A stretch of DNA of 64,000 bases from sequence record MT679221.1; one strand, written 5' to 3'. The notes beneath the pieces are model-generated. The model had not been told where the DNA came from. It searched no databases and saw nothing but the letters and a program-made list of their open reading frames with translations. Of the stretch, positions 1 to 6,142 are shown piece by piece. Within the stretch, counting starts at the first letter, position 1. Every line of letters starts with the position of its first letter. A program made the position numbers and the translations under genes.

Positions 1-93
1 ATAATACCTTTAGGTATTATATTTAATTATTATAATTATTTATATAAATAAATATATTAATATATTAAGATCTTAAAACGCGTGCGCACGCGT
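1..93. repeat. Chain of abutting palindromes, AT-rich then GC-rich (candidate origin or packaging element)
   Basis: ATAATACCT-tt-AGGTATTAT 1-20; TAATTAT-t-ATAATTA 24-38; TATTTATATAAATA 37-50; AATATATTAATATATT 51-66; TTAAGATCTTAA 65-76; ACGCGTGCGCACGCGT 78-93. The palindromes are read directly; the function is inferred. Confidence 0.85.
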
Positions 94-158
94 GCGTGAT
101 CCTTATTAAGAGATCGTGATCGGACGGAAGTCCGAGATTGGGTACCCTGTGTATTTTT

Positions 159-180
159 TACGTGGTTTCCCTATCGTGTG
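159..180 (+). promoter_or_regulatory. Putative nvRNAP (middle-type) promoter TAC-N15-TGTG
   Basis: Matches the YAC-N15-TRTR motif recurring in this window; resembles the phiKZ middle motif AAanntTAC plus the start-site TATG. Confidence 0.55.
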
Positions 181-388
181 TTCAGACCACCACTCGATGT
201 CAAAAACCCATAGCTTCGGTGGTCACCTCCCTGGTCGGTAGACTCTGACAAGTCGACCCACAACACCAACCCGTCCGGGGACGGATTTTTATTCCAACGA
301 CAAGCTCCACGAAAATCCCCGCAGAGGGACTCACTGCTGTGTGACTCACCGGCTCCTGGACGCCTACGCCTCGAGCCGGTAATTTTTT
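180..388 (+). ncRNA. Candidate small non-coding RNA
   Basis: No ORF. Promoter motif upstream. Hairpin CCGTC-CGGG-GACGG plus T tract at 271-290, and ACCGGCTC/GAGCCGGT plus T tract at 348-388. Confidence 0.35.
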
Positions 389-391
389 GAT

Positions 392-413
392 TACGTGAGT
401 TTGTTGTTATATG
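392..413 (+). promoter_or_regulatory. Putative nvRNAP promoter TAC-N15-TATG
   Basis: Exact motif spacing: TAC 392-394, TATG 410-413. Confidence 0.6.
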
Positions 414-990
414 CGAATAGCGATTGACCGCGCCAATGGTCCAATCACTTTTAAACCCTGCACGCTAGGGCTCCAAGTCCTGGGATTGTTACCCAGGACG
501 CTTTTTCGAAAATACCTACCGTGGTGTCTTCGACAAAGCGCAATCTAACACTGCGTGATTTATTATGTTCTGGAAAACTTTCGCCGTGGAACAGAACCGG
601 TGAGCGTCGGCGGGGATTCCGACAATCACCACCCATTCAGGTACTCGGTAAATAACCGACCTGCCGACGGTGCTACGTCGGGCGTAGTTCGGTTTGCGAG
701 AGTGTCGAGAAAGTCGACTGCGCACCCATGACAAAATCCGAGTTGACCGTGGCAGCGCCAGAGGACTGGGCAGCGGAGAGACGTCGTTGAACTTACCTCC
801 GATAGTTATCGCTGATTCCGCTCTGGCGTCGGGCCAAAACTGATTCGAATTCGGCGTTGCGTCGAAAAGGGGTCTGCGTGTAGAACCGCAGACTTGGGGG
901 ATAACTCCAAAGTGGGGTGATCGGATCTTGACGGCTCGGAACAGACGAGAGGGGTGGGTACTCCCGTTGAGAAACGACGGTACCTGGCTG
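413..990 (+). ncRNA. Candidate ~580-nt structured non-coding RNA
   Basis: Lies between two promoter motifs with no credible + strand ORF. Serial hairpins at 477-499, 567-597, 606-623, 850-866 and 872-893. Confidence 0.45.
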
Positions 991-999
991 ATTAAAATT

Positions 1000-1021
1000 T
1001 ACAGATTCTGCGTGAGGTATG
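1000..1021 (+). promoter_or_regulatory. Putative nvRNAP middle promoter (AAAATTTAC-N15-TATG)
   Basis: Full match to the phiKZ-type AAanntTAC with TATG 15 nt downstream; GGAG RBS of the next gene follows. Confidence 0.7.
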
Positions 1022-1045
1022 ATAAACCAAACGGAGAATTAAACC

Positions 1046-1621
1046 ATGAACTTGTATCGCATCGGGTTCTACCGAAACGAGATGCCTGAATCGGTTTTGG
1101 TTGTCTTAGCCGAAAACGAGGAGCAGGCCAAATCCTTCTGGCCGGTTAGCGCAGAGCGTCCAGCGATTGCGTGCTGCTACGACGGCGCTGTGTCTACCCC
1201 GATGGTTACGCCTGGGGTGGTTCTGAAGCAAGGCCGTTGGGATGATTATTCCCATCCCGGTTTGGAATTTGTTTCCGAATCCGCCAGACACACCTGGAAT
1301 CTTACCACGGGTAAAACCAGAGTGTACTTCGGCCACCAAGCCAAGCAACCGTCGCTCATCAAGCTGTACCTGGTTTACAGCGACGTCGCTACCGAAGACT
1401 ATGTCGACGCCGGAATCATCGTCGGGGCAACAACCCCCGAGGCGGCATTCGCACATTGGGACGGTGATAAACCCGGAATCGTTTCGGTCTGTGAGCTGCC
1501 ACTTGAAGCCGGTTTGGTTACGAACATCAAGTGTGAGCAAGGCCAGGAGCTGACTTGGATGCGCCAGGATTACCTGACGGAAACGACATTCGAGTACACA
1601 CCGAGGAAGGTGACCCAATGA
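1046..1621 (+). CDS. Hypothetical protein with two copies of a short phage domain
   Basis: 191 aa ORF with GGAG RBS. MNLYRIG..VVLAENEEQA and KLYLVY..IIVGATTPEAA resemble each other and the 2343-2585 protein. Confidence 0.8.
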   Translation: MNLYRIGFYRNEMPESVLVVLAENEEQAKSFWPVSAERPAIACCYDGAVSTPMVTPGVVLKQGRWDDYSHPGLEFVSESARHTWNLTTGKTRVYFGHQAKQPSLIKLYLVYSDVATEDYVDAGIIVGATTPEAAFAHWDGDKPGIVSVCELPLEAGLVTNIKCEQGQELTWMRQDYLTETTFEYTPRKVTQ

Positions 1622-2109
1622 CGACGATAGCGTTCGATGGAAAAGTCTTGGCTGCTGACGGCCAGCTGACCCGCGGGTCGAATATCTGCAACCTGAATAC
1701 CCAGAAGTTATTCATCTGCCCTTCTGACGAGGAGTGGTGGATTACTGGTGAACGGATTGTGGCGTTCGGAGTAAGCGGTGACATCACAGGACAGTTGGCC
1801 CTGCTGGAAACGGTCCGCTTGAGACCCGGCTACAAGGGATTAACACAAAGCTCGCAGTTACCTGCGAAGATGGATTTTACTTTCCTGATGCTTCTGGCCT
1901 CAGGGAAAGCGATAGTCGGTGGGAAGCGTGAAGACGACGTGTCGTTGTGGTGGAGTGAAGCCACACCACCTCTGGCAACCGGAAGTGGTTACGAGTATGC
2001 GTTGGGTGCGATGAAGATGGGCGCGAATGCGGTTCGTGCTGTTGAGATTGCGTCCGAATGCGATATCTACACCGGTGGTGAGATTAGCACTTACGAACTA
2101 CGGAGGTGA
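1618..2109 (+). CDS. HslV/proteasome-beta-like Ntn-hydrolase (threonine peptidase fold)
   Basis: Start reassigned to ATG 1618 (GAGGAAGG RBS, ATGA overlap). MTTIA..LAADG, a Lys about 30 residues in, ATGSG and DIYTGG match HslV catalytic motifs. Confidence 0.75.
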   Translation: MTTIAFDGKVLAADGQLTRGSNICNLNTQKLFICPSDEEWWITGERIVAFGVSGDITGQLALLETVRLRPGYKGLTQSSQLPAKMDFTFLMLLASGKAIVGGKREDDVSLWWSEATPPLATGSGYEYALGAMKMGANAVRAVEIASECDIYTGGEISTYELRR

Positions 2110-2112
2110 ATC

Positions 2113-2163
2113 ATGCGGGAGTCAGAAGCACGCAAGCTTGACCCCATCAATCGCCTGCGATAA
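2113..2163 (+). CDS. Possible 16-aa peptide MRESEARKLDPINRLR
   Basis: GGAGGT SD 5 nt before the ATG; too short for the ORF track. Confidence 0.3.
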   Translation: MRESEARKLDPINRLR

Positions 2164-2202
2164 CGGGGTAGCGCATCCGTATAAACACGTTTAAAGAATT
2201 CT

Positions 2203-2278
2203 GGGGGTATGGCGCAATTGGTAGCGCACCGGTCTCCAAAACCGAAGGTTCGAGGTTCGAAACCTCGTGCCCCCGCCA
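2203..2278 (+). tRNA. trnW: tRNA-Trp (CCA)
   Basis: 76-nt cloverleaf: GGGGGTA/TGCCCCC acceptor stem, CTCCAAA anticodon loop, TTCGAAA T loop, encoded CCA end. Confidence 0.95.
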
Positions 2279-2342
2279 CATTTAGCCAACGAATTCAGGT
2301 TCAACACAGAAGACACAGATTTGTCAACTGTTGGAGAACAAC

Positions 2343-2585
2343 ATGAATTTGTACTTGCTAGAACGAACTGACGATATCGGGTATGATGAATTTGATTCCA
2401 TAATCGTGGCGGCTCCTACGGAGCAAGCCGCGTGTGCAATTCCTCCCGACCGTGGTTATTGGATGGACTGCCGCTGGTTACCGAAAGAGCGCTGGGATGA
2501 AGGGCTTACCCTGACCGTTACTCTTATCGGCACTACGCACTATCCTGCTGGGACCGTCGTTCATGAATCGTTCAATGCTGGCTAA
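2343..2585 (+). CDS. Small hypothetical protein
   Basis: ATG 2343 with GGAGA RBS; MNLYLLERTDDIGYDEFDSIIVAAPTEQAA. Confidence 0.8.
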   Translation: MNLYLLERTDDIGYDEFDSIIVAAPTEQAACAIPPDRGYWMDCRWLPKERWDEGLTLTVTLIGTTHYPAGTVVHESFNAG

Positions 2586-2587
2586 AC

Positions 2588-2605
2588 AGTGGGCTTCGGC
2601 CCACT
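2588..2605 (+). terminator. UUCG hairpin after the first operon (no U tract)
   Basis: AGTGGGC-TTCG-GCCCACT. Confidence 0.5.
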
Positions 2606-2631
2606 AACCCTATTCGAGCCATGATACTTAC

Positions 2632-2992
2632 TCAGATTGTGCGGGTTGATGTCCCGCATGAGCCGGTAGCAGCTCAGACCTACGGTAAACCGATAAATCC
2701 GTAGCAGCCAGGTACACAAAGCACCAGGTCGCTTGTACAGGATGCTGGGTATCTGACCGGTCATAACCTCATTCGATACGAGACACGTTTATGCATGAAA
2801 TACTCCAGTACATCAGGATGTTGATTTCCAACGTCCGGTTCTGGGTATTCGGTCATGTTTGGTTTACAGGCGATGGGTTTTCCCGTAAGGGCCCCACTTA
2901 CAGACTGGCGTCTCCACGACAACCGTCCCTAGGGGACAGGCAAGCACCGGCCCATTAAGCCGCCATGCTACGCCTGTAAATCCACAATCTGA
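2632..2992 (+). ncRNA. Candidate multi-domain structured ncRNA (domain A)
   Basis: Closing helix TCAGATTGTG 2632-2641 / CACAATCTGA 2983-2992. Inner helix 2863-2872 / 2971-2980. Hairpins at 2680-2704, 2816-2836, 2882-2891 (GTAA loop) and 2925-2937. No ORF. Confidence 0.6.
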
Positions 2993-3250
2993 TAACCGAA
3001 TGGGATTGAGTTCCCAGTGTTAGGGTGACTGTGTGTCACCGTAGGCGCGGTACCTCATACGGCCGGTACGCCACGAATGTACGTGATAGCGGGTGGTGCT
3101 TGGAGACGCTAAGACCTGACCTTACGGCCAGGCTCAGAAGAAGAAGTCCATCGCCTGCATTCAGAAATGAATTTAGGTTAATTATCGGAAGCGGCGAAAT
3201 CGCTTACGTGATAACTTAGTAGTATGCAACGAACAATACCAGAGTGACTT

Positions 3251-3272
3251 TACGAGGTTACTGTGGTATATG
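3251..3272 (+). promoter_or_regulatory. Putative nvRNAP promoter TAC-N15-TATG inside the non-coding island
   Basis: TAC 3251-3253, TATG 3269-3272. Confidence 0.55.
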
Positions 3273-3620
3273 TCGGTGCGCCGGGCAACGTGTTGCCGCA
3301 GATAGGCCCGAGGGAGCTGAGTGCACTAACACACGCCGGGATGCACCGGCACCTTACAATGGGAGCGCTGTCACCATCAGTGATGACAGGAGTGAAGGAT
3401 TCGTACCTCACTCGACTGGGCGGAAGCCTGGGCGTTCCCCCATCTTCACATCATGGCCGGCTTGCCGGTTCAACGTAGACGTCTCGTAAGAGATTTCCAG
3501 TCAGGCAACTGATAACGCACCTAAGCGTCGACCTTGGACGTATGGTGTCTGGTTAAGTCCCCCGAAACGGAAACCAGTAGGGGTGTGGTACGTTGAGTGT
3601 AACTATCATGATGCCATGAA
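3272..3620 (+). ncRNA. Candidate structured ncRNA (domain B)
   Basis: Nested helices 3449-3455/3607-3613 and 3470-3477/3589-3596. GNRA-capped hairpins at 3419-3428 and 3481-3494. Further stems at 3284-3297, 3335-3350, 3390-3413 and 3549-3577. Confidence 0.55.
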
Positions 3621-3624
3621 CAAT

Positions 3625-3694
3625 GGCTTTGTAGCTCAGGTAGGTAGAGCAGCCTCATCGAGGAAGGTCGCCGGTTCGAGACCGGTCAAAGCAA
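3625..3694 (+). ncRNA. tRNA-like element with collapsed anticodon loop
   Basis: Acceptor GCTTTG/CAAAGC, D arm GCTC-AGGTAGGTA-GAGC, T arm GCCGG-TTCGAGA-CCGGT, variable loop AGGTC. Anticodon arm is CCTC-ATC-GAGG (3-nt loop). No CCA. Confidence 0.75.
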
Positions 3695-3770
3695 GAGCAG
3701 CGAAGTTAGAGGAATTAACACCCGACTCATAATCGGATATTTCGACGGTTCGAATCCGTCCGTTTGCTCG
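3695..3770 (+). tRNA. Atypical tRNA with CAT anticodon (elongator Met or Ile2; possibly pseudo-tRNA)
   Basis: CCGA-CTCATAA-TCGG anticodon arm, GACGG-TTCGAAT-CCGTC T arm, GTTA/TAAC D stem. Acceptor stem is 8 bp with a bulge; A in place of U8; no encoded CCA. Confidence 0.65.
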
Positions 3771-4149
3771 CCCTATTTGTGTTATCCTTATCCCGAAGGC
3801 ATTCGAAATAAGACGCGTATCCACACACGGGTCAAGGGTAACACGAACCACTTCCGCGGTCACCGTGTCCATTGCCGCCTACCTGCATGGGCTGTCCTCC
3901 GACACGGTGACTTCGGGCCAACTTACAGGCCAGGGCCGTTTGGGTTTTTCTTACGCATCCATCCAGAGCCACCTCGCGCCCTAGTCTGTATACCCCTTTT
4001 CTGTTCCTGGTTTGCCAACTAAATCAATTAAGCCTGGTGCGTTGCCCTGGGAACAGAAAAACTTATTCGGTTACACACCGAACCCACCCACGAGGGATAT
4101 GTCGTGGACTACCAATAGAAGCAGCAATAGTAGTAAGAAGGAAAGCAAC

Positions 4150-4971
4150 ATGTTTACAGTTAAACGTGTGATTGACGGTGACCGTATTATTACCGAACAT
4201 GAAAAAGTTCGTATCGGTGACCGTAAGTCTCGTGTATTCCGCGAGGCATTAAAAATGCTCGAGAACGAGCGCTTCGACATCGTTGTCGGTGATGAAAAAT
4301 TAGCCCTTAATCCGGGGTTAAAACGCGTTGCCCCTGATGTACCTGATCCGAACACCATGCATTTGTCTGATTATTGTAGCTGGCAGCAGCGCCTGTCTAC
4401 AAGTCAGCTTTATGCTCACGTATATCTAAGGCAGCTTTTCCCCAACCTTATTATCCCCGATTTGGAAACGGTCGAGGTGTTTAACTGCAACGCACGCGAG
4501 TTTGTTAGCTACGTGCTAGATAATAAGGGCAACGCTATCTTGGTACTGGCGACAAATTTATGTGAACCGGAAGCCATGGATAGTATCTGCGGCGAACTTG
4601 TTGGTTTCGGTACGCCCTTAGAAAAATTAGGTTGGTACAAGCCGTCTCCTGATAGCGACATGGCGATTATTGTCTACACTCAGGAAGAACTGCAACAAGT
4701 CGAATTAGAGCCTGGTCCATCTATCGAGTTCACTGATGTCCAGGAGCAATCGCAGTGGGTTAACGGTGAGTGCGTTGTTACTGTTTTAAAAGGCGCTCGC
4801 CCTGGCGACCGGTCAGTCGATGAACTGATTGGCGCAATGTGCATCGAAGAAGAATCTGGGTACGATCCTGATAACCAGATCAGTGCCGGTGCGTTGTACG
4901 AACTGTTTTATAAAGGCGACGAAGTCTACGTGGTTAACTCTCACGGTAAGACTACCGACGTCCTTCGCTGA
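4150..4971 (+). CDS. Hypothetical protein
   Basis: Start reassigned to ATG 4150 (AGAAGGAAAG RBS; MFTVKRVIDG..); 273 aa. Confidence 0.8.
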   Translation: MFTVKRVIDGDRIITEHEKVRIGDRKSRVFREALKMLENERFDIVVGDEKLALNPGLKRVAPDVPDPNTMHLSDYCSWQQRLSTSQLYAHVYLRQLFPNLIIPDLETVEVFNCNAREFVSYVLDNKGNAILVLATNLCEPEAMDSICGELVGFGTPLEKLGWYKPSPDSDMAIIVYTQEELQQVELEPGPSIEFTDVQEQSQWVNGECVVTVLKGARPGDRSVDELIGAMCIEEESGYDPDNQISAGALYELFYKGDEVYVVNSHGKTTDVLR

Positions 4972-5061
4972 ATTAGCTAACGCCCAGTAGCTATGTTCCT
5001 GACGATTAGCCCTCGTCTGACCTTGTAAGACCTTGTAGATTTACATGCCAACACCAGGGAA

Positions 5062-5103
5062 GTCCTCACTCTTCGGAGTGAGGACAACTCTTTTATTTTT
5101 TTT
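5062..5103 (+). terminator. Intrinsic terminator
   Basis: GTCCTCACTC-TTCG-GAGTGAGGAC followed by a T tract. Confidence 0.85.
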
Positions 5104-5120
5104 GTATTCCAAATATTTGC

Positions 5121-5140
5121 AGATAGATATTACCTAAGTG
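5121..5140 (+). promoter_or_regulatory. Putative early (virion RNAP) promoter
   Basis: AGATAGATATTACCTAAGTG; contains the phiKZ early-motif core TATTAC. Confidence 0.7.
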
Positions 5141-5194
5141 AGATGAGAAAGCCTCATCTGAATTCCCCCAACTCGACTATAAAAGGTAAGCATC

Positions 5195-6142
5195 ATGTAC
5201 AGACCAAGTAATCCTAGCGCTATTGAAGGATTAAACCAGGATGGCTTCAGCCTCGCAGAAGCAACCCGCATTCGACCTTTCTTACCTCGCAGATTCTTCC
5301 CTTTCGGTTCGTTATACAGAACGAACTTTGACGCTTGGGAAGCGATACGTGCTGTAAAAGATGCACTACAGTACAAGAACTTCGAATTCCGATTTGTGTT
5401 CAAATGGGGCAACGGCGAATTGCTCCACTACTTCGGATTCCAACAGAACGAGTTTATTGAGTATACCTCACCTACGTACCACACCAAGTTCCTAAGCATT
5501 GAGTTTGTTCGCCATTTCGGCGATGCACTCTTTACGGAACGGGCTACAGATGAAAACCATGGACGTAGACTGATGTTAACGAACGGTGCATTGCGCATCA
5601 AGATGAATCGTTTACGGGAAGCGTATAACCAGCTCATCAATCCTGAACCGGTAATGTTTCCAACGGTGGCAGATATGAATGTAACACCGCTTCAGCTACC
5701 TGTGGATATAGACAAACCAATTCTGGCAATCAGAGCACTGCAGGCAGGTTATGCAAACTGGTATAAAGGGCACAGTCTCCCGAACACCAGATTGAACATC
5801 GAACCGTATGAGTTGTGTTTATTCTTAACTCTACGCAAGCGGTTTGAGCCGAATAACTTAGACTTGCGTTATTTAGCGACTCCTGATGTTGGAACCTATT
5901 ATCCTGCGAATTGGATGGTTGCGGCAGTCCTACCGGACGGCGAGATGGTCGGTAGCATCGTTTATGGGACTCAACAATTACCTTCTCCGTTAGCACCACC
6001 GAAGGATTCTATATATCCGTACGCTTCCTGGTACGTTGGCAGTAACGGAGCTAGATGGTTGGTACTCCACGTCCCTGAGGAAGTTTATAATTTGTTTCCA
6101 CGTGAGCAATGGCTTAGCGTGTACGATTTTCAGTTTGGTTAG
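5195..6142 (+). CDS. Hypothetical protein
   Basis: 315 aa ORF with AAAGGT RBS, flanked by a promoter motif and a terminator. Confidence 0.85.
   Translation: MYRPSNPSAIEGLNQDGFSLAEATRIRPFLPRRFFPFGSLYRTNFDAWEAIRAVKDALQYKNFEFRFVFKWGNGELLHYFGFQQNEFIEYTSPTYHTKFLSIEFVRHFGDALFTERATDENHGRRLMLTNGALRIKMNRLREAYNQLINPEPVMFPTVADMNVTPLQLPVDIDKPILAIRALQAGYANWYKGHSLPNTRLNIEPYELCLFLTLRKRFEPNNLDLRYLATPDVGTYYPANWMVAAVLPDGEMVGSIVYGTQQLPSPLAPPKDSIYPYASWYVGSNGARWLVLHVPEEVYNLFPREQWLSVYDFQFG

What the first reader, a model, noticed from the sequence alone, without database searches (positions are those of the whole stretch)
1..134. Six abutting palindromes: candidate origin, pac site or cruciform element
Seen: positions 1-93 are tiled almost completely by palindromes. 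The first 78 nt are nearly pure A/T and switch abruptly to the GC-rich ACGCGTGCGCACGCGT. A CGGAC-GGAA-GTCCG hairpin follows at 121-134. Inference: an easily melted or extruded element followed by RNA-only transcription units fits a replication origin or a terminase/nuclear-shell binding site. I know of no defined origin for this family.
Basis: partly seen in the sequence, partly recalled or inferred. Interest (0 to 1): 0.65.

Follow-up and report, generated by a model that had tools for sequence, protein, structure and literature searches.

The report
AT-rich GATC-ringed jumbo-phage control element
The palindrome block is real: it is the right-hand part of a unique, easily melted DNA element ringed by methylation (GATC) sites, kept by a whole clade of nucleus-forming giant phages, and it is the best candidate for where they start copying, or less likely packaging, their DNA.

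Summary
The window is the start of the Proteus phage 7 record (Seoulvirus, SPN3US species; nucleus-forming jumbo phage).

**Observation.** All reported palindromes exist. Their tiling of 1-77 far exceeds dinucleotide shuffles (73 nt covered vs 25±14).

**Record cut.** The record start cuts the element. 37 nt of its left part are missing from this record, and its left flank lies at the record's other end. Relatives and independent contigs carry it intact and internally, so it is not an assembly artefact.

**Full element (~200 nt).** GC clamp, AGGATCTTTTAAAAGA, a 70-115-nt core of 82-94% A+T with one or two small G/C-bearing dyads, a second GC clamp, then a GATC-rich box.

**Distribution.**
- It lies in a 1.75-kb CDS-free gap, about 4 kb after the large terminase gene and 60 nt before a conserved promoter-like box.
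- In four genera it is both the most AT-rich spot and the densest GATC cluster of genomes otherwise depleted of GATC.
- These genomes encode a Dam-type methylase. Looser versions occur in Vibrio phage pVa-21 and Derbicus.

**Reading.** Methylation-controlled replication origin 0.45; P1-like pac site 0.25. GC skew is uninformative.

This scan found the same element before on other DNA (s1-159102, s1-160659).

The parts
1..77 (.). Right two-thirds of the AT core (92% A+T here; the full core in relatives is 113 nt, and its first 37 nt are missing from this record)
   Evidence: unique AT maximum and duplex-stability minimum of the genome; palindrome tiling above shuffles.
1..20 (.). G/C-bearing dyad ATAATACC-TTTA-GGTATTAT inside the AT core. 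It sits at a conserved distance (+28 to +38 nt) from the left GATC in 7 of 9 elements.
   Evidence: ATACC/GGTAT (Seoulvirus), ATATC/GATAT twice, 40 nt apart (Erskinevirus), TATCCC/GGGATA (Machinavirus, SPAsTU). Both arms change together.
65..76 (.). Right boundary palindrome TTAAGATCTTAA holding a GATC. It mirrors the left boundary GGATCTTTTAAAAGAT, which is absent from this record.
   Evidence: the two boundaries pair in the single-strand fold.
78..98 (.). Right GC clamp, 21 nt of strictly alternating purine/pyrimidine (ACGCGTGCGCACGCGTGCGTG), including the 16-nt palindrome at 78-93
   Evidence: a CG/CA-alternating clamp flanks the core on both sides in all genera, although its sequence drifts.
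96..123 (.). Right conserved box GTGATCCTTATTAAGAGATCGTGATCGG with three GATC sites
   Evidence: conserved in 8 of 9 elements over five lineages; part of the densest GATC cluster of the genome.
121..134 (.). Small hairpin CGGAC-GGAA-GTCCG. It is genus-specific and probably incidental.
   Evidence: weakened in phage 1252, absent in other genera.
154..182 (+). Conserved promoter-like box TTTTTTACGTGG...TATCGTGTG
   Evidence: conserved in all 7 aligned genomes; TTTTTTAC: 14 copies, 12 on the + strand, mostly intergenic; RNA contigs begin about 30 nt downstream.
193..1045 (+). CDS-free stretch present in RNA-library contigs, downstream of the element
Evidence: contigs of RNA runs X15 and X16 both begin at 193 and run through 1045; no convincing ORF.

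Best explanation
The block is the right part of a roughly 200-nt cis-element that most likely serves as the replication origin of SPN3US-like nucleus-forming phages.

Proposed mechanism:
- A 70-115-nt core of 82-94% A+T is the place where the duplex opens (a DNA-unwinding element).
- GC-rich purine/pyrimidine clamps on both sides confine the melting to the core.
- One or two short G/C-bearing dyads in the core, together with the conserved flanking boxes, are landing sites for a phage protein that is still unidentified.
- The ring of GATC sites, methylated by the phage's own Dam-type enzyme (or by the host's in Derbicus-like phages), times or licenses firing, as at E. coli oriC or P1 oriR.
- A conserved promoter-like box 60 nt to the right starts the neighbouring non-coding RNA and tRNA transcription unit. 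An upstream box (TTTTTAAAACA-N3-ACTTA) could supply a priming transcript, as at T7 and T4 origins.

Shown: uniqueness, conservation, architecture, the GATC ring, Dam co-occurrence, and the RNA contig start.

Inferred: unwinding, protein binding, methylation control and any role in initiation.
For: (1) Uniqueness. It is the only 60-nt window of 85% A+T or more, and the least stable duplex, in 242 kb.

(2) Conservation. The architecture is kept in Seoulvirus, Erskinevirus, Machinavirus, Wellingtonvirus and an uncultured UViG. The core sequence is free to vary while composition, clamps, boxes and dyads are kept. It is a conserved island (about 80% identity) in otherwise unalignable non-coding DNA.

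(3) Coincidence of AT maximum and GATC cluster.
- In Proteus phage 7, Asesino, Huxley and Kwan the same spot is both the AT maximum and the densest GATC cluster: 6-7 sites in 300 nt, Bonferroni P 0.003-0.014.
- Genome-wide, GATC is at 0.36-0.53 of expectation.
- The same coincidence recurs at a syntenic 1.5-kb gap in Vibrio phage pVa-21, and at a different site in Derbicus: 9 GATC in 300 nt, P 9e-9, directly after the T4-like DNA polymerase gene.

(4) Phage Dam. A Dam-family methylase is encoded (TIGR00571 6e-76; E. coli Dam 2g1p 4e-57).

(5) Setting. It lies in the largest CDS-free region, 1.2 kb after a gene whose model has a DNA-ligase fold.

(6) Covariation. The dyads change on both arms between genera.

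(7) Literature. No origin is described for the family in a 2026 review.
Against: - There is no direct evidence of initiation here.
- GC3-skew modelling puts the best origin of Proteus phage 7 at 0-6 kb, but the gain (6.6%) is within permutations. It is not reproduced in Huxley, Kwan or Derbicus.
- There are no DnaA boxes and no iterons, no SeqA or MutH homologue, and no initiator gene recognised next to it.
- The resemblance of the right box to the oriC 13-mer GATCTCTTATTAGGATC is not significant (P 0.06-0.09).
- The element lies only about 4 kb after the large terminase gene.
- A Dam-dependent bipartite GATC site is also the design of P1 pac.
- Goslar, RAY and the phiKZ-like SL2 have no such element, so it is not a family-wide solution.
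Confidence: 0.45

Rival explanations
1. Packaging initiation (pac) site. The terminase, with an unidentified recognition subunit, binds the two GATC-rich flanks when they are fully methylated by the phage Dam. It makes the first cut of a headful series in or near the AT core, as at the P1 pac site.
For: - P1 pac, checked in NC_005856.1, has 4 + 3 TGATCR hexamers flanking a 90-nt centre that holds the annotated cleavage sites.
- P1 needs Dam methylation at pac and carries its own methylase (PMC12707154).
- Here 3-4 GATC sites lie on each side of the core, and the phage has a Dam gene.
- The element lies about 4 kb (SPN3US) to 6 kb (pVa-21) downstream of the large terminase gene.
- At least five independent records begin or end inside the core: Proteus phage 7, SPFM2, SPFM16, SPFM17 and the SEGD1/JN03/EC001/Lh1B group.
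Against: - The P1 centre is 53% A+T and lies inside pacA. Here the centre is 82-94% A+T, is non-coding and is clamped by GC, which is typical of unwinding elements.
- Record breaks are equally expected from poor coverage of 97% A+T DNA. Other records and contigs carry the block internally at arbitrary positions.
- The literature takes these phages for T4-like headful packagers without a site (PMC5694885; PMC6256631).
- In Derbicus the AT/GATC locus sits by the DNA polymerase gene, about 21.7 kb around the circular map from the end of the large terminase gene.
Confidence: 0.25
2. Transcriptional or architectural element. It would be an upstream activating or insulating region, or a binding platform for a nucleoid-type protein. 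It would separate the late structural/terminase operon from the RNA/tRNA unit and boost the promoter at 154-182.
For: - A strong terminator follows the last upstream gene.
- A conserved promoter-like box lies 60 nt after the core.
- RNA contigs start at 193.
- The dyad at 1-20 loosely resembles the promoter-like motif AGATATTAYCT found upstream of genes.
Against: - None of the other 13 TTTTTTAC sites or roughly 17 AGATAGATATTATCT sites has such a block.
- A unique 115-nt core with GC clamps and a GATC ring is far more than a promoter needs.
- Uniqueness per genome points to a once-per-genome function.
Confidence: 0.15
3. Recombination hotspot or cruciform with no dedicated function, or a fast-evolving low-complexity spacer kept only by mutation bias.
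For: - The core sequence varies freely, with length 70-113 nt.
- The single-strand fold is somewhat better than shuffles (z = -2.5).
Against: - Flanking boxes, clamps, dyad position and GATC sites are conserved across genera whose neighbouring proteins are only 48-60% identical.
- GATC is avoided elsewhere in these genomes but concentrated here.
- Arms of at most 9 A/T-rich pairs are poor cruciform formers.
Confidence: 0.08
4. Assembly-end artefact: the block is junk added or scrambled at a contig end.
For: It sits at position 1 of the record. 37 nt are missing relative to all relatives.
Against: - The same sequence is internal in phage 1252, SPLA, SPFM4/11/13 and other records.
- It is also internal in contigs of independent runs X1 and X2.
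- Only the truncation is an artefact.
Confidence: 0.02

Closest known systems
E. coli oriC (and P1 oriR): AT-rich unwinding element with GATC-initiated 13-mers, Dam/SeqA control
   Same: - An AT-rich melting region whose boundaries begin with GATC (GATCTTTT...).
- The densest GATC cluster of the replicon.
- A Dam-type methylase is available.
- The right box resembles the oriC 13-mer GATCTCTTATTAGGATC (oriC taken from NC_000913.3).
   Different: - No DnaA boxes and no SeqA.
- The core is two to three times longer and far more AT-rich.
- GC clamps are present.
- The 13-mer resemblance is not significant (P 0.06-0.09).
- The DNA replicates inside a protein shell that should exclude host DnaA (established knowledge of chimalliviruses, not tested here).
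Bacteriophage P1 pac site
   Same: - Two clusters of GATC-containing hexamers flank a central region.
- The phage encodes its own Dam.
- Methylation is needed for function in P1.
- It lies near terminase genes.
   Different: - P1 pac lies inside pacA; its centre is 53% A+T and has an IHF site.
- Here the element is non-coding, 82-94% A+T, GC-clamped, and 4 kb from the large terminase gene.
- No small terminase subunit is known.
T7 primary origin and T4 oriF/oriG (phage promoter followed by an AT-rich unwinding element, transcript-primed)
   Same: - Promoter-like conserved boxes sit next to an AT-rich unwinding region.
- The phage has its own RNA polymerases.
- No primase-type initiator is evident beside it.
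   Different: - This comparison rests on my knowledge of T7 and T4, not on a test.
- No RNA contig was seen entering the core.
- The upstream box is unique in the genome, so it is not a standard promoter.
Iteron-type origins (lambda ori, plasmid oriV)
   Same: - An AT-rich region lies next to repeated protein-binding sites.
- Erskinevirus has the dyad ATATCTTTAGATAT twice, 40 nt apart.
   Different: - No array of three or more direct repeats.
- The dyads lie inside, not beside, the AT region.
- No initiator gene overlaps it.

Membership tests
DnaA-dependent oriC-type origin | Cluster of DnaA boxes (TTATNCACA) beside the unwinding element | tested here: not met
   no exact box, and at most one box with one mismatch, in 700 nt around the element in 9 genomes (shuffle mean 0.6-0.9).
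DnaA-dependent oriC-type origin | AT-rich unwinding element with a GATC cluster | tested here: met
   the AT maximum and the GATC maximum of the genome coincide in four genera.
DnaA-dependent oriC-type origin | Replication-associated compositional skew switching at the site | tested here: inconclusive
   the best-fit origin is 0-6 kb in Proteus phage 7 and Asesino, but the gains are within permutations. It lies elsewhere in Huxley, Kwan and Derbicus.
Iteron-type origin | Three or more direct repeats (iterons) next to an AT-rich region, with an initiator gene nearby | tested here: not met
   no 8-mer occurs three or more times; neighbouring proteins have no initiator family. The 377-aa neighbour has a ligase fold.
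P1-type methylation-dependent pac site | Bipartite clusters of GATC hexamers flanking the cut region, with a Dam supplied by phage or host | tested here: met
   2-4 GATC sites on each side of the core, and a phage Dam gene. The P1 reference was verified.
P1-type methylation-dependent pac site | Virion DNA ends generated at the site | not testable with these tools
   Only Logan contigs were available. They cannot show molecule ends, and read laying skipped positions 1-65 as repeats.
P1-type methylation-dependent pac site | Location within or beside the gene of the recognition (small) terminase subunit | tested here: inconclusive
   the element is about 4 kb after the large terminase gene. No small subunit is recognisable.
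Promoter-plus-unwinding-element origin (T7/T4 type) | Phage promoter reading into the AT-rich element and an RNA that enters it | tested here: inconclusive
   there is a conserved upstream box, but it is unique in the genome. RNA contigs start at 193, to the right of the core; the left side lies outside the window.
Cruciform-forming inverted repeat | Long perfect inverted repeat able to extrude | tested here: not met
   the longest arms are 9 nt. The single-strand fold is -14.9 kcal/mol, z = -2.5.

The most novel reading that the evidence does not exclude
SPN3US-like nucleus-forming phages run a private epigenetic switch. Their genomes are purged of GATC except for one ring around a unique unwinding element. 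The phage's own Dam, working inside the phage nucleus, sets the methylation state of that ring. This would couple the start of replication to the start of packaging from the same site: one element serving first as origin and then, when fully methylated, as pac. It would work without DnaA, SeqA or a classical small terminase.
Probability: 0.12. Interest if true: 0.85.

Novelty: new variant of a known kind. Interest (0 to 1): 0.6.

Why it matters
No replication origin or packaging start is defined for any nucleus-forming jumbo phage. These phages are studied intensively as models of viral compartmentalisation and as therapy candidates.

A single, sharply delimited element about 200 nt long gives a concrete target. 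It is conserved over several genera and tied to a phage Dam methylase and to genome-wide GATC avoidance. It can be deleted, moved, or followed by marker-frequency and read-start analysis in SPN3US, which has a genetic system.

It also explains a practical nuisance: many published genomes of this group are broken, truncated or scrambled exactly here.

Tried and rejected
**Compositional skew**
- The detrended cumulative GC skew has its minimum at 240,932, 1.5 kb from the element.
- + strand genes show GC3 skew of 0.024 before 115 kb and -0.023 after it (P 0.016, cut chosen post hoc).
- A two-replichore regression puts the origin at 0-6 kb, but the gain is not above permutations.
- The result does not replicate in Huxley, Kwan or Derbicus. 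I rejected skew as evidence either way.

**Similarity to oriC**
- The 13-mer similarity is real to the eye but P is 0.06-0.09 against local shuffles.

**Host-type factors and repeats**
- DnaA boxes and iterons: none.
- SeqA and MutH homologues: none.

**RNA families and neighbouring proteins**
- Rfam search of 1-6000 found only tRNAs.
- Pfam and PHROGs scans of five neighbouring proteins gave no function.

**Sequencing runs**
- Only Logan contigs were on offer, so starts, ends and depth could not be read.
- Read laying skipped 1-65 as repeats.

**Other chimalliviruses**
- Goslar, RAY and the phiKZ-like SL2 have no Dam, no GATC depletion and no outstanding AT/GATC locus. The element is clade-specific, not family-wide.

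**Record starts as evidence**
- The clustering of SPFM record starts 0.3-4.3 kb from the element looked like evidence for physical ends.
- It turned out to be a record artefact: 60-nt lines in reversed order.

**Searches that gave nothing usable**
- The pattern TCCTMCAGGATCTTTT in viral contigs gave mostly chance hits.
- Sternberg & Coulby 1990 is not held in the library.

Full report
**Identity of the window.** Bases 1-3000 match Proteus phage 7 (MT679221.1, 242,444 bp; Seoulvirus, species SPN3US) at 100% from record position 1. They match about 40 SPN3US-like Salmonella, Escherichia and Erwinia jumbo phages at 65-98%. The whole record, fetched in pieces, equals the window over its first 64 kb. 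These are nucleus-forming chimalliviruses (PMC13282480).

**The observation.**
- In 1-77, 73 nt are covered by perfect inverted repeats with arms of 6 or more. Dinucleotide shuffles give 25 ± 14, and none of 1000 reached 73.
- Single palindromes are not unusually long.
- The block is the only 60-nt window of at least 85% A+T in 242 kb. It is also the least stable 50-nt duplex (z = 7.2).

**The record start cuts the element.**
- The last CDS of the record ends at 241,754 and the first starts at 1046. The block therefore lies in a 1.75-kb CDS-free gap that spans the record ends.
- In phage 1252 the same region is internal. There, 37 nt (AGGATCTTTTAAAAGA...; L001 2964-3000) stand between the last bases of the Proteus phage 7 record and window position 1.
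- That motif is absent from the entire Proteus phage 7 record.
- At least four other independent records break inside the core (SPFM2, SPFM16, SPFM17 and the SEGD1/JN03/EC001/Lh1B group). Many others carry it at arbitrary internal positions.
- A 239.6-kb contig of run X1 and a 20.5-kb contig of a manure metagenome (X2) also hold it internally.
- The block is therefore genuine. Only its truncation is an artefact.

**Anatomy (from phage 1252, L001 about 2925-3125, and eight other genomes).** From left to right:
- an upstream box, TTTTTAAAACA-N3-ACTTA, unique in the genome;
- two or three GATC sites;
- an 18-nt alternating purine/pyrimidine GC clamp;
- the box TCCTMCAGGATCTTTTAAAAGA;
- a core of 70-113 nt at 82-94% A+T, free in sequence but holding a G/C-bearing dyad 28-38 nt from the left GATC, and often a second dyad about 40 nt further on;
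- a second GC clamp (window 78-98);
- the box GTGATCCTTATTAAGAGATCGTGATCGG (window 96-123);
- a promoter-like box, TTTTTTAC... (window 154-182).

The dyads change on both arms between genera: ACC/GGT, ATC/GAT and CCC/GGG. This fits either a hairpin or a dimeric binding protein that co-evolves with its site. Outside this island, the surrounding non-coding DNA does not align between genera.

**GATC and Dam.**
- GATC is under-represented in these genomes: observed/expected is 0.53 in Proteus phage 7, 0.38 in Asesino, 0.44 in Huxley and 0.36 in Kwan.
- In each of them, the densest 300-nt GATC window is the element itself, with 6-7 sites (Bonferroni P 0.003-0.014). This is also the AT maximum.
- All four encode a Dam-family methylase. 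In Proteus phage 7 it lies at 98,637-99,368 (TIGR00571 6e-76; E. coli Dam 2g1p 4e-57).
- Vibrio phage pVa-21, the nearest outgroup by large terminase, has Dam and GATC at 0.38. It has a looser AT/GATC locus in a syntenic 1.5-kb gap, 6 kb after the large terminase gene.
- Derbicus and CR5 lack Dam and lack the element at the syntenic site.
- Derbicus nevertheless has its AT maximum and 9 GATC in 300 nt (genome ratio 0.22; P 9e-9) at 13.74-14.02 kb, just after the T4-like DNA polymerase gene.
- Goslar, RAY and the phiKZ-like SL2 have neither Dam, GATC depletion nor such a locus.

**Surroundings.**
- The large terminase gene ends about 4 kb upstream.
- The 377-aa gene 1.2 kb upstream has no Pfam match. 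Its AlphaFold model (pLDDT 88) matches ATP-dependent DNA ligases.
- In two RNA libraries, contigs start at 193 and cover the CDS-free 193-1045 and beyond. They skip 1046-1617, a gene that those relatives lack.
- Contigs cannot prove a transcript start. However, DNA carry-over would be expected to reach the GC clamp near position 100.

**Origin versus pac.**
- For an origin: a unique, clamped, extremely AT-rich core; the GATC ring, as at oriC; and the Derbicus locus beside the polymerase gene.
- For pac: the P1 precedent, which I verified in the P1 record. It has 4 + 3 TGATCR hexamers around a 90-nt centre with annotated cleavage sites, and it needs Dam. Nearness to the terminase gene and the record breaks also count for pac.
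- Against pac: the P1 centre is 53% A+T and coding. Assembly breaks are expected in 97% A+T DNA anyway. The field assumes T4-like site-free headful packaging.
- Skew analyses do not help.
- There are no DnaA boxes, iterons, SeqA or MutH. If this is an origin, it is not of a host type.
- My estimates: origin 0.45, pac 0.25, transcriptional or architectural element 0.15, hotspot or no function 0.08, artefact 0.02.

**Earlier notes.** This scan noted the same kind of element twice before on other DNA (s1-159102, s1-160659), with the same leading reading. I treated these as leads only.
- the truncation of the element in this record;
- the genome-wide GATC and AT statistics in nine genomes;
- the Dam co-distribution;
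- the relocated Derbicus locus and the pVa-21 locus;
- the negative skew result;
- the verified P1 comparison.

Noticed in passing
L028 1-900 (LR535903.1, Salmonella phage SPFM5); by BLAST pattern also SPFM1, 7, 10, 12, 14, 15, 20: The first kilobases of these public records consist of 60-nt blocks in reversed order (a file reversed line by line). BLAST therefore breaks into 5-40 pieces. It is a database artefact located around this element.
   Followed up: partly
L023 1480-2298 (Proteus phage 7 98,616-99,434, outside the window): A Dam-family DNA adenine methylase (TIGR00571 6e-76; E. coli Dam 2g1p 4e-57). It is present in Seoulvirus, Erskinevirus, Machinavirus, Wellingtonvirus and pVa-21. 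It is absent from Derbicus, CR5, Goslar, RAY and SL2.
   Followed up: yes
whole genomes: GATC is at 0.22-0.53 of expectation in the SPN3US-like clade, but at 1.24-1.75 in Goslar, RAY and SL2.
   Followed up: partly
L002 657-1790 (Proteus phage 7 240,101-241,234); homologue L140 3899-5026: The 'putative DNA ligase' has no Pfam hit. Its predicted structure (pLDDT 88) nevertheless matches ATP-dependent DNA ligases (Chlorella virus, ASFV, T7; E about 2e-6). I did not check the catalytic motifs.
   Followed up: partly
Derbicus MK514282.1 13,740-14,020 (L082 about 4740-5020): The AT maximum of the genome and 9 GATC in 300 nt lie in a 310-nt gap between convergent genes, right after the T4-like DNA polymerase gene. 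This looks like a relocated counterpart of the element.
   Followed up: partly
L024 4990-5130 and L025 4930-5070 (Derbicus, CR5; site syntenic with the element): A moderately AT-rich stretch with iteron-like repeats (ATGGATAA / AATGAAT / TAATTAG) behind a TTTTTTACA box. Its function was not examined.
   Followed up: no
window 1046-1621: This 191-aa ORF has no Pfam or PHROG match. It is present in Proteus phage 7, 1252 and the SPFM phages, but absent from SPN3US, SPLA3 and SaP7, and from the relatives in RNA runs X15 and X16 (a clean 572-nt skip).
   Followed up: no
window 5125, 8089, 16095, 25603, 27019, 30761 and about 11 more sites in the genome: The promoter-like motif (C)AGATAGATATTATCT lies on the + strand just upstream of genes. 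A second motif, TTTTTTAC, often follows terminator hairpins.
   Followed up: partly
L139 6160-7680 (Vibrio phage pVa-21 178,661-180,183): A 1.5-kb CDS-free gap with two AT-rich patches, a GC clamp and 8 GATC, syntenic with the Seoulvirus element.
   Followed up: partly
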